Made by a program: the position numbers and the translations under genes
Part shown: positions 28,519-56,488 of the stretch, one piece after another
How the letters are laid out: each line of letters starts with the position of its first letter
Numbering within the stretch: position 1 is the stretch's first letter
Assembly (NCBI RefSeq): GCF_902713615.1
Contig: NC_052152.1
Span: 52,365,810 to 52,429,809, forward strand
Direction of reading: 5' to 3'
Length of the DNA stretch: 64,000 nucleotides
DNA from: Scyliorhinus canicula
Lineage: Eukaryota
Notes under the pieces: generated by a model
Told to the model about the DNA's origin: nothing
The model's database searches: none
The model's input: the letters and a program-made list of their open reading frames with translations, nothing else

Positions 28519-28902
28519 CTAAAAGACCAACAATGATACCGACAGGACTGGATATTCTCTCCGCTACTTTGTCCCAGGTCCCATTGGTAGACTGGATCCA
28601 GGCAGAGGCTGTACAGTAATAATATCCATTGTCTGTTTCATCAATCTGTTGCACTCTCAGTTGGTAATCGGTACCATTAATCCTGCTCAATGTGACAAAA
28701 TTTGTATTGTTCACCACTGCCGCACGGTTCACGTGCACTAAAACATTATCGCTCAGAGGATGAACTGTTGCAGATATGCTGAAATGCCAGCTCACTTCGA
28801 CTGCCACATCTTCAACTCCTGTTACACTGCAGAGGAGATCAATCTCATCACCTTTGTTTAAAGTGTGGGTCCCTCCCATTGTAGAGACTTGTAGGATCTG
28901 GG
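28519..28902 (-). CDS. PTGFRN: PTGFRN exon 4: Ig domain 3
   Basis: tgtttgttatag|CC CAG ATC; IDLLCSV...VEVSWHF...DNGYYYCTASAWIQ; donor G|gtaatt; 384 nt keeps frame. Confidence 0.92.
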
Positions 28903-29175
28903 CTATAACAAACACATTATATTCGTTAGCAAGGTTTTCCCCAAGAGTATTCCAAACTTCAACAATTACCTGAACTTGACCATTCTGACCAAAGAACATT
29001 GTAGCAGACGGATGAATCAGCCATGAAGTAAGTGACTCATCAAGTTCCTCAGCACAGTTTCAGAAACATTCATGCAAAAAACTGTTAGTTTACATAAGAT
29101 TAATTCATATCATCCGCTAGTCCATAGTGCCTCCTCTGATTTTATAAACAGGGGCGGCTGTAGCATAGTGATAAT

Positions 29176-29277
29176 TACGAAAGAGAAAATGCTGGAAAAT
29201 CTCAGCAGGTTTGGCAGCATCTGTAGGGAGAGAAAAGAGCTAACGTTTCGAGTCCGATGACTCTTTGTCAAAGCTCC
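29176..29277 (-). mobile_element. Penelope-like element terminal fragment with 9-bp TSD
   Basis: AGTGATAAT at 29167-29175 and 29278-29286; homologous to 38755-38858; carries a hammerhead motif, as is typical of PLE pseudo-LTRs. Confidence 0.8.
29236..29277 (-). ncRNA. Minimal type I hammerhead ribozyme motif (U3-A8 variant, palindromic stem III)
   Basis: Minus strand G-GAGCU-UUGACAA-A-GAGUC-AUCG-GACUC-GAAA-CG-U-U-AGCUC-U: stem I 5 bp plus G-U, stem II 5 bp, GAAA, GUU site. Activity untested. Confidence 0.75.
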
Positions 29278-30267
29278 AGTGATAATGACACTGGACTCAT
29301 GATCCAGAGGCCCAAACACATGCTCTAGAGACATGGGTCCAATTCCCACCACAGCAGCTGGCAGAATTTGCATTCAATAAATCTGGAAATGAACATTAGT
29401 CTCAATAATGGTGACCATGACAACGATCATCGATTGCTGTAAAAACCCATCTGGTTCAGGAATGCCCTTTAGGGAAGGAAATCTGCTGTCTTTCCCTGGT
29501 CTGGCCTTCATGTGACTCCAGACCCACAGCAGTGTGTTTGACTCCTAATTGCCCTCTGAAATGGCCTCAGAAGCCACTCAGTTCAAGGGCAATTAGGGAT
29601 GGTCAACAAATGCTGGCCGTACCAATCATATGCTTAAAAGAATAAAGAAACCCTTTCGATTAACCACTTACTGAATCTTATTTTTAAATGTTGACACTGA
29701 AAAATTCTTATGAGCGGCTCAGAGACACGTATTGGTCAACCATATTGATTCAACCATCAGTTCCAGTAGTACCTTCCAGGGATTTACACCCCTCTGTGAA
29801 ACATATTTTCCTACTCGCAACTACCTACTTATTTTAATCTTGCGCCTATTATTCCCCTTCGTTCTAGATCCCTCAACGTTGGAAACAGTATGTTTCTATG
29901 ATTCTGTCCAATATCTTAATTTCAAAAACATCACCGGGCCCTCTATTGCTTAAACATCCTTGTGGAGTAGAACACAAAACCGTAACCTTAGTAAATATTT
30001 TATATCCATGCATTACATCTCAGCTTTTGTATCTTATACCTCTTGCCGCGCAACCCTGTAGTCCATTGATTTCCTCGAGATACTGCTCAGATAATACCTA
30101 CGGTAAAACAGCTTGCCGAAATGAAATATTGGATTTAAACCTGGTTTTTAATGCTTATGTTAGCAATTACATTTAAACCACCCTCTATCCTGGGAAGAGT
30201 CATTCAATAATATTTGCATGAAGATTTAATCAACGTACAATCAAATTATTTGCTGAGAATAACATAC

Positions 30268-30690
30268 CTAATTGTTGCACTGTGACCATTGCAATGTCTG
30301 TAGTTTTTTCTTGGATTTTTTTCCAGTTGGAGCCATCTTCTTTGACCCATTCTGCTGCTACACAGGAGTAAACACCCTCGTCCTCAGGTCGCAAGTGGGT
30401 GATTATCAATTTGAAGATACCATTTTCCTCCATCCCCATTCTAATATCACCACTCTGATACCTATTTTCATACAAATTACCGGGCTGAAACCAGTGACCT
30501 TCAGTGAATGACAGGACGTCCTTAGTCAGACTGCCGTTTACCTTTAACTGCCACGTTACGGAGAGATGAGTGGGAACAGACGAAGTAGTCTTTGCAACAC
30601 ACTGAAGTTCCAGAGGCTTCCCTTGGGTGTAACTCGTGGACTTTACACTTCTTGATTTTTCAGATGATAAAGTCAGTCCATCTGGGATCA
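30268..30690 (-). CDS. PTGFRN: PTGFRN exon 3: Ig domain 2 (EWI motif, here EWV)
   Basis: aaacag|TG ATC CCA; VIPDGL...LELQCVAK...HLSVTW...EDEGVYSCVAAEWVKE...KIQEK; donor G|gtatgt. Confidence 0.95.
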
Positions 30691-35585: not shown

Positions 35586-36761
35586 CAGTAGGATATAGGG
35601 AGTAATAACTGAAGATGCTGCTGTGTCTCAAGGAGGAATGACAATATATATTCAAAATGCTGTGAGAATCTGGTCCCTGCACCTACTTAAATCATGTTAT
35701 AAAGTCTCACTTATTTTAGGCGAATTGGCTATGCTAAATTGCCTCTTACGTGTTCAAAACATGTACAGTTCAGGTGAATTGGCCATGATCAATGCACAGA
35801 GTTACAGGAAAGGGCAGGGGGAGTGAGCTCAGACAGAGTCCCAGAGGGTCAGTGCAGACCTGATAGCCGAATGGCCTCCTTCTGCACTGTCAGGATTCTA
35901 TGGATTTTGGTGAGGAACAGATTGCATGTTTTACTATCCTTATTAGAATTTAACCTCTGTGCACTACTAAGTGGTATAGTGAAATAGATGATGTACTTCT
36001 AATGGTTTCTGGTCACAACCTTTTAAGCCAGTGACAGTGTAAAGGCATTTGGCACTGGTTAAATTAATGGCTAAAATTTCTTAATTCAAAAATACACTAG
36101 AAAAATAACAAGAGAACAGAGGGTGCTGGAAAAATTCAGCAGGTCTGCCAGCATTTCTATCCAACTAAAATAACTAATCATACATGCATGACATAATGAG
36201 CAAATACAGACCAGAAAGACAGAATTCCATTTATGGGCCCTGCCAATTTAACTAATCTTAGTCAGGGTAAGAGTAGGGACACAGCAATTAGCAACAGTAC
36301 TCCTACCTTGATACAGGGGGTTGGGTGGGAGGTTGGGGTAGGGGATAATAGAAGTAAGACACCAGTGTTCCTTTTTTCTGATCAATTGTCAGGAACTGTC
36401 ACCAGAGAGCGGTGTGTTTATGCAGGTGTATGAGACAAGTAAAGATAAGAATAAGCTCAGTTGAGTGGCTTCCACAGTTGAACAACTGATCATTCGTGGT
36501 CAAGATCTTCACATTAAAAAGATAGCTACTTGGGTGAGATAAAGTAAGCTGCCTGAACATGCAGAAGCATATCCCAGTATCAGGCAGCAACTTAAGTGGA
36601 GGGGGGTGAAAATTGGAAAAGGTGAACTTATTTTGCCCCAAATTATAAATAGTGAGAAAGCAGATACAAGTAGGATCAGTGCTATGTAGTCATGTGACAT
36701 ACGCATCCACTTAAAATGAATTAATGGTAATAGCAGTTAATGTATCAATTGCAAAGCTTAC

Positions 36762-38714: not shown

Positions 38715-39115
38715 CGACACAAATGATAAAAGCAAATTACTGCAGATGCTGGAATCTGAAGCCAGAAAGAAAATGCTGGAAAATCTCAGCAGGTCTGGCA
38801 GCATCTATGGGGAGAGAAAAGAGCTAACATGGAGTCCAGATGACCCTTTGTCAAAGCTACCATACAGAGAAAGTGGGAAATATTTATACCATGGAGTGAG
38901 AATGAAAGATGAGTCAAAGCCACAGAAACCCAGGGAAACGGGGTGCTAATAGCCACAGAAAGCAAGGTGAAAGACTGCTAAGGGCCGTCCCCAGAGAGAA
39001 CAAAAGATGTGAAAGGCCAAACTGCAGAGAAACTATCAGAAGGTAAACTGTGACAGATGTCGATGTGTGGGGAGGGGAAGGGGGAAGCAAAGGGGAGGAA
39101 GGGTAATGAAAGTTT
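38715..39115 (-). mobile_element. Penelope-like terminal fragment with disabled hammerhead motif (38821-38858)
   Basis: Homologous to 29176-29277; AGCU-UUGACAA-A-GGGUC-AUCUG-GACUC-CAUGUU-AGCUC, i.e. GAAA lost. Confidence 0.72.
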
Positions 39116-39117
39116 GA

Positions 39118-39460
39118 ACATAGAACATAGAACAGTACAGCACAGAACAGGCCCTTCGGCCCTCAATGTTGTGCCGAGCCATGATCACCCTACTCAAACC
39201 CACGTATCCACCCTATACCCGTAACCCAACAACCCCCCCCTTAACCTTACTTTTATTAGGACACTACGGGCAATTTAGCATGGCCAATCCACCTAACCCG
39301 CACATCTTTGGACTGTGGGAGGAAACCGGAGCACCCGGAGGAAACCCACGCACACAGGGGGAGGACGTGCAGACTCCACACAGTGACCCAGCCGGGAATC
39401 GAACCTGGGACCCTGGAGCTGTGAAGCATTTATGCTAACCACCATGCTACCCTGCTGCCC
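39118..39460 (-). mobile_element. HE1-type V-SINE, subfamily with (ctatgtt)n CR1 tail
   Basis: aacatagaacatagaacagtacagcacagaacaggcccttcggccc tail, intact V-domain and head. Confidence 0.92.
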
Positions 39461-43816: not shown

Positions 43817-44002
43817 CGCTTCGACTCATTGCAGTGAACACAATACAGACAGGAGGGGTCTGTATTATGCTCCTATTTTAATCAACTCCCAACATGCAAA
43901 GGGGATTACAAATCAAGACTATGGTGACTAGAGTTGACGTTAAATCTTTCAGTAACTGAGCTAGCACTATACAAGTAATTGTTGGGGAGGGGGGGTTGCA
44001 AG

Positions 44003-44528
44003 AGGCGGTGGTGCAGTGGTATTGTCACTGGACTAGTAAACCAGATACCCAGAATAATGCTCTGGTGACCCAGGTTAAAATCTCGCCATTATGTAAAATA
44101 TGTATGCCGGCTAAAGGGGGGAGGCCACAGTTAGTATTACGAAGATGCTGACCTGTAAATATATATGTTAATTTTTGCGTGTTCTTTTTTTTATTTTATT
44201 TTTTAATTTATTTGTTTGTTTATTTTTTTTTCTCTTCTCTCTCTCTAACAATTTGTGATTTGTTCAATATAAAACATGAAAACTGAATAAAAAACATTTA
44301 TAAAAAAAAAAAATCTCGCCATTGCAGATGGCGAAATTTGAATTAAATAAAAATCGAATGATGACCACAAAACCATTGTCGATTGTCACAAAAACCCATC
44401 TGATTCAGTAATGTCCTTTAGACAAGGAAATCTGCTGCCTTACTTGGTCTGGCCTATATGCAACTCCAGATCCACAGCAACGCGGTTGGCTCTTAACTGC
44501 CCATCAAGGGCAATTAGGGATGGGCATT
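44003..44528 (+). mobile_element. SINE family B interrupted by a poly(A) retro-insert
   Basis: Collinear with the 29151 copy once 44091-44309 is removed. Confidence 0.85.
44091..44309 (+). mobile_element. 5'-truncated polyadenylated retro-insert (L1-type 3'UTR or mRNA 3' end)
   Basis: AATAAA and A tail; 14-bp TSD aaaatctcgccatt (44077-44090, 44310-44323); target TT/AAAA. Confidence 0.85.
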
Positions 44529-45101
44529 CCCAATTTTCTTTTGGTGGGTGTCTCATTTGCCTGCACAATCCGGCAGGTTAACATTGGATCAGGGTCTGAG
44601 TCTCTGTTTTTAAACTCACCGTTCCGATGGACGAGTAGGGTCAAAATTCACTCCATGGTCTCTGACCATGCATACCTTCATTACTTAAATGAAATGCAAT
44701 TCCAACACTGAGACACAGAAACATCTGGTGTAAACATGGAGTGGTGGAATACTTCCAAAACGTTAGCTGATATGGACTTGAGAGTCATTTTATTCCCATG
44801 TCTGCACCTACCCAGTGTTCCCATCAAATTCCCATATTCAAGGCAGCATTTACACAGTGAGTGGGGTGACTAGTAACAAGAGTTTTTTCTTTTAAAATCA
44901 ATGGTTTAACTGAAGCTGTTGAGCAACCGCAAAGAGTCAGTACCTCGCTGAAGGAGTTAAATTAGATTTTTGGTGATCAGCAATAAAAATGGAATCCTTT
45001 CCCCCTGGTTTTGCGCCTCAGTGTTCAATGCTTGTCTTACAAAATTGACTACGAAAATTGGACTGTCAAAAGGTAAGGAGCAGAATTTACATTTTTGATA
45101 T

Positions 45102-56244: not shown

Positions 56245-56461
56245 TGTGGTAAATCACTGTTACACCTGTATTTGGTGATGTAAAGTAGGACCTGTACTAC
56301 AGGTTCGCCGGTAGTCCCTGCCTGCTAGCTCCGCCCAGTAGGAGGAGCGTGTCCACTATTCAGCAACCATTTTGCCAGCTGCTGTGGGAGGCCACACATC
56401 TTACTGCAATAAAGCCACAGTTGTGTCCAACCTTAGTCTTTGTACAATTGATCGTGCATCA
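56245..56461 (+). repeat. 5' LTR (217 bp)
   Basis: TGTGGTAAATCACTG...GATCGTGCATCA; contains AATAAA. Confidence 0.95.
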
Positions 56462-56488
56462 ATTTATTGCAGTAAGATTTTCTAAAAG

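What the first reader, a model, noticed from the sequence alone, without database searches (positions are those of the whole stretch)
29236..29277. Apparently intact dimer-type hammerhead ribozyme with compensatory U3-A8 core, sense to the PTGFRN pre-mRNA
Seen: the minus strand (gene sense, intron 3, ~340 nt upstream of exon 4) reads GGAGCU UUGACAA A GAGUC AUCG GACUC GAAA CG UU AGCUCU. Stem I (GAGCU/AGCUC plus G-U), stem II (GAGUC/GACUC), GAAA and a GUU site are all intact. The core is UUGACAA instead of CUGANGA, so positions 3 and 8 have both changed. Established: C3 and G8 form a tertiary Watson-Crick pair in hammerheads, and U3-A8 is the compensatory swap. An extra A between A9 and G10.1 occurs in natural hammerheads. 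Penelope-associated minimal hammerheads with a tiny palindromic stem III (here ACGU) are reported to cleave as dimers. Inference: this shark PLE family carries a covariant, possibly active ribozyme. This copy could cut the PTGFRN pre-mRNA between 29242 and 29241 if it pairs with a second copy in trans, coupling host transcript processing to PLE RNA abundance. A plain CUGANGA motif search would miss it.
Basis: partly seen in the sequence, partly recalled or inferred. Interest (0 to 1): 0.85.

Follow-up and report, generated by a model that had tools for sequence, protein, structure and literature searches.

The report
Variant hammerhead motif in retroelement fragment
The hammerhead-ribozyme-like motif is real and carries a paired U3-A8 core change shared by tens of thousands of copies of a shark Penelope-type repeat, but this kind of variant was published in 2014, this copy is a 102-base dead-on-arrival fragment, and nothing supports it cutting the host gene's RNA.

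Summary
It is not chance: 0 of 300 simulated windows match a minimal-hammerhead descriptor.

It is also not special to this locus. The motif sits in a 102-nt, 5'-truncated retrocopy (29277-29176). A perfect 9-bp target-site duplication flanks it, inside an older repeat in an intron of an EWI-family Ig gene (PTGFRN or IGSF3-like).

Public shark DNA contigs show the same module at roughly 10^4-10^5 copies in two species. U3, C7, A8 and the bulged A are the majority letters throughout. A roughly 385-nt fuller copy lies at 38725-39111, in the intron upstream of the 36.7-37.2 kb Ig exon, and has lost GAAAC.

U3-A8 minimal hammerheads in Penelope-like elements were already described by Cervera & de la Pena in 2014. 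This is a new member of a known kind. This scan has already flagged the same family about 65 times elsewhere in this genome.

The proposed trans-dimer cutting of the host pre-mRNA is unsupported:
- The 4-bp helix III is worth about -1.7 kcal/mol.
- Single motifs showed no cleavage in published assays.
- RNA reads run uncut through intact copies, with no pile-up of ends at the predicted site.

The parts
29236..29277 (-). Minimal type-I hammerhead motif with a U3-A8 core. Contains stem I, UUGACAA plus a bulged A, stem II, GAA, the palindromic helix III ACGU, and U17. The predicted scissile bond lies between 29242 and 29241.
   Evidence: Sequence read; fold; chance control.
29176..29277 (-). The 102-nt 5'-truncated retrocopy that carries the motif. 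It consists of the hammerhead plus a roughly 65-nt downstream tail, and it lacks the optional roughly 40-nt 3' extension seen in copy 2.
   Evidence: The reconstructed empty site aligns straight through another copy of the host repeat. Sharp depth boundaries at about 29176-29184 and 29275-29279.
29278..29286 (-). Target-site duplication ATTATCACT, 5' copy.
29167..29175 (-). Target-site duplication ATTATCACT, 3' copy.
29287..29650 (.). An older, unrelated interspersed repeat (element A) into which the fragment inserted. It continues at 29135-29166 beyond the insert.
   Evidence: BLAST finds copies at about 44.0-44.5 kb, 38.57-38.65 kb and 16.9 kb, none with a hammerhead tail. Alignment.
38725..39111 (-). 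Fuller (~385 nt) copy of the same family, same strand, lying upstream of the 36.7-37.2 kb Ig exon. The hammerhead region at 38858-38821 has the same AGCUUUGACAAAG core. GAAAC is lost there (it reads CUCCAUGUUAGC), so the copy is catalytically dead.
   Evidence: The whole span is repeated in the DNA of both species, with sharp ends at 39111 and 38725/6.
36124..36155 (-). Tail-only relic of the same or a sister family, with no hammerhead part.
28531..28903 (-). Downstream Ig V-set exon of the host gene. The acceptor lies 338 nt 3' of the predicted cut site.
30266..30690 (-). Upstream Ig V-set exon of the host gene, EWI family (contains EWV).

Best explanation
The motif is a genuine, sequence-intact copy of the minimal hammerhead carried by a very abundant shark retroelement family of the Penelope-like or non-LTR-retrozyme type. 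The family's consensus core has the covariant tertiary pair U3-A8 instead of C3-G8.

The copy at 29.2 kb is a 102-nt, 5'-truncated, dead-on-arrival retrocopy. It inserted with a 9-bp target-site duplication into an older repeat inside an intron of an EWI-family Ig gene, before the two sampled shark species split.

Inferred: in source elements, the ribozyme acts, if at all, as in other Penelope-like elements. Two copies in one tandem transcript would build a composite helix III from the ACGU palindromes and cleave slowly after U17. The paired 3/8 change, with every other catalytic nucleotide kept, argues that the fold was under selection in the master copies.

The solitary intronic copy has no partner in cis and only a 4-bp trans contact. 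It is therefore most likely a neutral fossil that does not measurably cut the host pre-mRNA.
For: Shown directly:
- Motif anatomy.
- Non-chance occurrence.
- Stems I and II are the minimum-free-energy fold.
- The insert is discrete, with a perfect TSD and a continuous empty site.
- A second copy in the window has the same core.
- Summed contig depth is about 2x10^5 over the core and about 1.5x10^6 over the tail, against about 5 in the unique flank. There is a 5'-truncation gradient. All of this is seen in organism A and organism B.
- With copy 2 as the reference, so that the core is internal to the alignment, no majority variant appears at any core position. Position 10.2 splits about 50/50 between G (a G.U pair) and A (an A-U pair), so pairing in helix II is kept.
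- An organism-B contig bridges the 5' junction at 29226-29338 (table 8, record 16).
- CpG decay at ACGU and at C11.1-G12 reaches about 6-12% per site, as expected for neutral copies.

From the literature:
- U3-A8 minimal hammerheads, a bulged nucleotide 5' of helix II, a 4-5 bp helix I, the dimer requirement and low activity in vitro (PMC4209133).
- Penelope-like element insertions show an AT-rich ATT target preference and an optional 30-40 nt tail. No RNA-seq ends were found at the hammerhead site in Anolis, and the hammerhead is not needed for insertion in vitro (PMC11167929).
- Retrozymes derive from Penelope-like element terminal repeats, with a mean consensus of 363 bp in Chondrichthyes (bioRxiv 10.64898/2026.07.22.740005).

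Inference: if two substitutions fell at random among about 11 invariant core positions, about 1% of outcomes would be a compensatory Watson-Crick swap.
Against: - No reverse transcriptase or GIY-YIG ORF is linked to this family in the window. The Penelope assignment rests on motif type and insertion signatures.
- Low-frequency variation at positions 3 and 8, and its linkage, could not be measured. The variant table is truncated, and the core lies near the alignment edge.
- No sister family with C3-G8 was recovered here, so covariation is judged against the general hammerhead consensus, not within one alignment.
- Catalytic activity of this U3-A8 and GUU-site version is untested.
- The RNA-seq libraries (oligo-dT, single-end) are insensitive to 5'-OH ends, so the absence of ends is weak evidence.
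Confidence: 0.75

Rival explanations
1. Active host-RNA cutter. The intact intronic copy pairs through ACGU with another family transcript in trans and cleaves the host pre-mRNA at 29242|29241. This would tie host transcript processing to the abundance of Penelope-like element RNA.
For: - All catalytic positions are intact in this copy, in gene sense.
- Family RNAs of exactly this form are present in RNA-seq (303 reads), so partners exist.
- C3/G8 double mutants that keep pairing retain partial activity (PMC11167929).
Against: - Helix III alone is worth -1.7 kcal/mol. The predicted dimer fraction is 0.02% at 1 uM and lower at cellular concentrations.
- Single motifs showed no detectable cleavage, and dimeric or trimeric constructs showed only low activity, mostly at non-physiological Mg2+ (PMC4209133).
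- Reads span the scissile bond of intact copies, depth is flat across the site, and no begin/end pile-up is seen in two RNA runs.
- The only other copy found in the same gene's introns has lost GAAAC.
- This scan's notes report sense-strand intronic copies as common. That would not be expected if such copies were harmful. These notes are unchecked.
Confidence: 0.04
2. Inactive family-wide relic. The master element's hammerhead lost activity through C3>U and G8>A drift. The family spreads without any ribozyme function, and the motif is kept only by descent or as a protein-recognition structure.
For: - Hammerhead catalytic mutants do not affect Penelope-like element insertion in vitro, and no RNA-seq ends map to the site in Anolis (PMC11167929).
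- No ends are seen here either.
- No loose-end cluster at 29241/2 appears among the best-supported genomic 5' ends.
- The GUU site and the lack of loop-loop contacts predict slow chemistry.
Against: - The only two departures from the invariant core hit the two partners of one tertiary pair and restore Watson-Crick geometry, which is about 1% by chance (inference).
- All other core nucleotides, the palindromic helix III and helix II pairing (G.U or A-U) are kept in the consensus of two species.
- The same covariation arose independently in flatworm Penelope-like elements (PMC4209133).
Confidence: 0.2
3. Chance resemblance to a hammerhead in an unrelated repeat tail.
For: Rfam hammerhead models give no hit even at E<=10.
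Against: - 0 of 300 simulated windows match the descriptor.
- The full set of 11 or more core positions, three helices and the bulge match the published Penelope-like element minimal-hammerhead architecture.
- The Rfam miss is expected for a motif with no helix III hairpin and a changed core.
Confidence: 0.01

Closest known systems
Minimal hammerhead ribozymes (min-HHR) of Penelope-like elements, including the U3-A8 covariant variant of Schistosoma mansoni Cercyon elements (Cervera & de la Pena 2014, PMC4209133)
   Same: - Type-I order of strands.
- Short helix I (4-5 bp in the consensus).
- An unpaired nucleotide 5' of helix II.
- No helix III hairpin, only a short palindrome, which implies dimeric action.
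- Massive dispersed copy number, mostly as single truncated motifs.
- The same U3-A8 replacement of C3-G8.
   Different: - The host is a shark, not a flatworm. The vertebrate Penelope-like element hammerheads reported there were in bony fishes, coelacanth, Xenopus and reptiles.
- Helix II is 5 bp here, not 6-8 bp.
- The cleavage triplet is GUU.
- Linkage to a Penelope ORF is not shown in this window.
Dimer-forming small hammerhead variants associated with Penelope-like elements (Lunse, Weinberg & Breaker, RNA Biol 2017; cited in PMC6765202; the paper itself was not readable here)
   Same: A tiny palindromic stem III, with cleavage reported only as dimers.
   Different: I could not read that paper, so I cannot say whether it lists shark or U3-A8 examples.
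Non-LTR retrozymes, the non-autonomous derivatives of Penelope-like element terminal repeats (Cervera & de la Pena 2020, PMC7229834; Li et al. 2026, bioRxiv 10.64898/2026.07.22.740005)
   Same: - A non-coding unit of a few hundred nt carrying a type-I hammerhead. The fuller copy here is about 385 nt, against a mean consensus of 363 bp in Chondrichthyes.
- Monomeric dispersed copies are frequent, including in introns.
   Different: - Retrozymes are defined by tandem arrays and circular RNAs. No tandem arrangement or back-joined reads were seen here. A few 'goes back' contig joints do exist at very low depth.
Conserved intronic hammerheads of amniotes (HH9/HH10, in the RECK and CTCL introns; reviewed in PMC6155905)
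   Same: A hammerhead in gene sense inside an intron.
   Different: - Those are single-copy, conserved and monomeric, with a stable helix III and loop-loop contacts, and Rfam recognises them.
- This one is a repeat-borne minimal motif with no sign of selection at the locus.

Membership tests
Hammerhead ribozyme (catalytic core) | Invariant core: C3 U4 G5 A6 N7 G8 A9, G12 A13 A14, A15.1-U16.1, H17. | tested here: inconclusive
   All positions are canonical except 3 and 8, which are U and A. This is the covariant pair reported in natural Penelope-like element hammerheads (PMC4209133). It keeps the pairing but is not the canonical identity.
Hammerhead ribozyme (catalytic core) | Three helices around the core: I and II within the motif, III closing 15.1-16.1. 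| tested here: met
   - Stem I is 6 bp in this copy and 4 bp in the family consensus.
- Stem II is 5 bp.
- Helix III exists only as the palindrome ACGU, so it needs a second strand.
Hammerhead ribozyme (catalytic core) | Match to curated covariance models (the Rfam Hammerhead families). | tested here: not met
   No hammerhead family matches at gathering score or at E<=10 on 29150-29350.
Hammerhead ribozyme (catalytic core) | Site-specific self-cleavage that yields 2',3'-cyclic phosphate and 5'-OH ends. | not testable with these tools
   Only indirect evidence is available. There is no read-end pile-up at the site, and reads span it, in two oligo-dT RNA runs.
Penelope-like element min-HHR (Cervera & de la Pena 2014) | Minimal architecture: short helix I, a bulged nucleotide 5' of helix II, and no helix III hairpin (a palindrome instead). 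| tested here: met
   compared with the description in PMC4209133.
Penelope-like element min-HHR (Cervera & de la Pena 2014) | Location in the terminal repeat of an element that encodes a reverse transcriptase plus a GIY-YIG endonuclease. | tested here: inconclusive
   - No such ORF exists in the window. ORFs of 130 aa or more give only Ig domains or nothing.
- Consistent signatures are present: 5' truncation, a TSD, an AT-rich target containing ATT, and two alternative 3' ends about 40 nt apart (compare PMC11167929).
- First-stage notes from elsewhere in this genome claim GIY-YIG linkage for hammerheads. I did not check them.
Penelope-like element min-HHR (Cervera & de la Pena 2014) | High-copy dispersed family, mostly as single truncated motifs. 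| tested here: met
   Summed contig depth is 2x10^5 to 1.5x10^6 against about 5 in the unique flank, in two species. The window holds three copies of differing length.
Non-LTR retrozyme | Tandem repeats of a hammerhead-bearing unit that give rise to circular RNAs. | tested here: not met
   Both copies in the window are solitary. No supported back-joined RNA reads were found. Only single low-depth 'goes back' DNA contigs appear.

The most novel reading that the evidence does not exclude
The U3-A8 hammerhead family is catalytically competent in vivo. Intact sense-strand intronic copies such as this one would then be cleaved whenever family RNA is abundant enough to supply helix III partners, or with the help of a chaperone or the element's own protein. 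Thousands of shark pre-mRNAs would carry conditional self-cleavage sites.
Probability: 0.04. Interest if true: 0.7.

Novelty: new member of a known kind. Interest (0 to 1): 0.25.

Why it matters
If the family is active, it would be a second, independent natural case of the C3-G8 to U3-A8 swap, after flatworm Penelope-like elements. It would also be a very large one, at roughly 10^4-10^5 copies in sharks. That would be useful natural data on how strictly the hammerhead's tertiary pair depends on geometry and not on base identity.

It also shows that motif searches and Rfam under-count hammerheads in cartilaginous fish.

For the host gene, the finding is most likely of no consequence.

Tried and rejected
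- Rfam at gathering score and at E<=10: no hammerhead match. This is uninformative, because minimal motifs lack helix III.
- Search for further hammerhead-like motifs in the window: the only other hit, at 46.5 kb, has a 4-bp stem and no family context, so I treated it as chance.
- Search for a Penelope ORF in the window: none.
- PDB sequence search to name the host gene: only generic Ig hits. The ESM Atlas placed it in the EWI family without separating PTGFRN from IGSF3.
- Scans of viral and metagenome collections for the tail motif, to collect sister families: 0 hits and 1 chance hit in an unrelated coding region.
- ARAGORN on the host repeat: no tRNA called, so I make no SINE/tRNA claim.
- RNAcofold cannot represent the true double-hammerhead, which is a kissing topology and gave an energy error. 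I therefore evaluated only helix III and nested dimers.
- The Lunse et al. 2017 paper is not held in the library.

Full report
**The observation**

- Stem I is GGAGCU (29277-29272) paired with AGCUCU (29241-29236).
- The core is UUGACAA (29271-29265), so position 3 is U and position 8 is A. A bulged A follows at 29264.
- Stem II is GAGUC/GACUC, closed by AUCG.
- GAA supplies G12-A14.
- ACGU (29246-29243) stands in for helix III, and U17 is at 29242. The predicted scissile bond is 29242|29241.

The two-stem scaffold is the minimum-free-energy fold of the isolated 54-mer (-14.9 kcal/mol). Stem II and a 4-bp stem I survive in a 181-nt context.

A descriptor accepting C3-G8 or U3-A8 minimal hammerheads finds this single site in the window and none in 300 simulated windows. 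Rfam gives no hammerhead match, even at E<=10.

**What the motif sits in**

BLAST of the surroundings against the window shows that similarity to other copies begins at 29275 and ends near 29184. The 360 nt upstream belong to a different repeat, with copies at about 44 kb, 38.6 kb and 16.9 kb that lack any hammerhead tail.

The 9-mer ATTATCACT occurs at 29286-29278 and again at 29175-29167. Removing the 102 nt between them, together with one copy of the 9-mer, gives a sequence that aligns straight through the other copy of that older repeat.

The hammerhead therefore lies in a discrete 102-nt, 5'-truncated retrocopy (29277-29176) with a perfect 9-bp target-site duplication. The two leading G's, which lengthen stem I to 6 bp, are junction-specific. 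The family consensus upstream of AGCU reads ...CUGUU, which gives only the 4-bp stem AGCU/AGCU.

**The family**

A second copy on the same strand (38858-38768, 90% identical) shares AGCUUUGACAAAG, so the U3/C7/A8 state is inherited and not private decay. That copy has lost GAAAC and is catalytically dead.

I laid public shark DNA contigs on the 29.2-kb copy.
- Summed depth is about 2x10^5 over the core and about 1.5x10^6 over the tail, against about 5 in the unique flank.
- The boundaries are sharp and there is a 5'-truncation gradient.
- The picture is the same in two organisms.
- The tool warns that summed depth is not a copy number, so I say only roughly 10^4-10^5 copies.

I then laid the same runs on the fuller copy (38720-39130).
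- The whole span 38725-39111, about 385 nt, is one family with sharp ends and A/T-rich flanks.
- No majority variant appears at any core position.
- Position 10.2 is G (a G.U pair) or A (an A-U pair) in about equal halves, so helix II pairing is maintained.

The exact form seen at 29.2 kb (GAGUC AUCG GACUC) is a subfamily form. It recurs as the consensus of 303 RNA reads.

The commonest variants in the hammerhead are CpG transitions at ACGU and at C11.1-G12, about 6-12% per site. That is what neutral decay of copies predicts.

An organism-B contig bridges the 5' junction (29226-29338, table 8, record 16). The insertion therefore predates the split of the two species.

**Caveats on the family data**
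- In one search the core lies within 5-10 nt of the alignment edge, so mismatches there may be clipped and not counted.
- In one search the variant table is truncated (226 rows not shown).
- I can state that U3 and A8 are the majority letters. I cannot give their minor-allele frequencies or their linkage.

**Is it a Penelope-like element?**

The architecture matches the published minimal hammerhead of Penelope-like elements: a short helix I, a bulged nucleotide before helix II, and a palindrome in place of helix III (PMC4209133).

The insertion signatures also fit:
- 5' truncation and a target-site duplication.
- An AT-rich target containing ATT.
- Two alternative 3' ends about 40 nt apart. 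The copy at 29.2 kb stops at the first, and the copy at 38.7 kb carries the extension. Depth falls about three-fold between them.

These recall the ATT preference and the optional 30-40 nt tail described for an Anolis element (PMC11167929).

The roughly 385-nt non-coding unit resembles the retrozyme and terminal-repeat derivatives of Penelope-like elements, whose consensus averages 363 bp in Chondrichthyes (bioRxiv 10.64898/2026.07.22.740005).

No reverse transcriptase or GIY-YIG ORF is present in the window. Membership is therefore by signature, not by linkage.

**Does it work, and does it cut the host RNA?**

The only two departures from the invariant core fall on the two partners of one tertiary pair and restore Watson-Crick geometry. 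By simple counting, about 1% of random double changes among about 11 invariant positions would do so (inference). Together with the maintained helix II pairing and the palindromic helix III, this favours a fold that was selected in master copies.

Activity itself is untested. The published behaviour of this class is:
- No detectable cleavage for single motifs.
- Low activity for dimeric or trimeric constructs, mostly at non-physiological Mg2+ (PMC4209133).
- In Anolis, activity that depends on C3-G8 pairing, no RNA-seq ends at the site, and no requirement for the hammerhead for insertion in vitro (PMC11167929).

For the solitary intronic copy:
- ACGU/ACGU is worth about -1.7 kcal/mol.
- The nearest-neighbour model predicts 0.02% dimer at 1 uM. 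Tertiary contacts are not modelled.
- In two oligo-dT RNA runs, depth is flat across the site and reads carrying the intact form span the scissile bond. No begin/end pile-up is reported at the site. The only one lies at 38896.
- These libraries are insensitive to 5'-OH ends, so this evidence is weak but consistent.

I conclude that the copy is a neutral fossil and that the proposal of host pre-mRNA cutting is unsupported.

**Host gene**

Minus-strand ORFs at 36.7-37.2, 30.2-30.7, 28.5-29.0, 22.4-22.8 and 21.2-21.7 kb are Ig V-set domains. The exon upstream of the insert groups with IgSF3 and PTGFRN clusters. The gene is an EWI-family member. I did not verify the name PTGFRN or the intron number.

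**Comparison and novelty**

U3-A8 covariant minimal hammerheads in Penelope-like elements were published in 2014 (PMC4209133). A full-text search for 'U3-A8' together with 'hammerhead' returns only that paper. No paper in the library links sharks, Penelope and ribozymes in substance.

This is a new member, in a new host lineage, of a known kind. The scan itself has already flagged the same family about 65 times elsewhere in this genome. Those notes are unchecked and were used only as leads.

Noticed in passing
window 29221-29240 (minus strand), and the same place in copy 2 at 38806-38825: Directly after the hammerhead, the family carries a near-consensus 3' splice-site tract (UUUUCUCUCCCUACAG) followed at once by AUG. 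In gene-sense intronic copies this could act as a cryptic acceptor. In the element itself it may mark an intron end or an ORF start, since Penelope-like elements are known to retain introns.
   Followed up: no
window 29218-29220 onward; copy 2 at 38726-38803 (minus strand): The ATG after the hammerhead opens a frame with no stop to the end of the element, 26 codons in copy 2 (MLPDLLRFSSIF...). This recalls the Anolis element, whose ORF starts at the hammerhead. An open run of this length has about a 0.3 probability by chance.
   Followed up: partly
window 29249-29255 and 29244 (RNA run X22): RNA reads are dominated by variants that are rare in DNA: 29253 T>C in 65% of reads against 0.3% of DNA depth, and 29244 C>T in 59% against 12%. 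Most family RNA in that library therefore comes from a few loci, probably embedded in highly expressed host transcripts.
   Followed up: no
window 29287-29650 plus 29135-29166; also about 43960-44530: An older interspersed repeat hosts the insertion. Its plus strand has a T-arm-like box (GGGTCCAATTCCCACC). That gave only a weak partial Rfam match (E=8), and ARAGORN called no tRNA. It may be a tRNA-derived SINE.
   Followed up: partly
window 29224 and 29235 (loose ends); 38819: Sister subfamilies share the tail but have a different stem I and a decayed helix III (for example ...GGACUCGAAACAUUAACUCUG...). Their cores could not be seen. They are the natural place to look for C3-G8 relatives.
   Followed up: no
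window 56398-56478: Another first-stage note on this window concerns a Gypsy element with a fold-back onto its own LTR. It is unrelated to this finding.
   Followed up: no
L001 2088-2109: The only metagenome hit to the 22-nt tail motif lies in an unrelated coding region. It is a chance match.
   Followed up: yes
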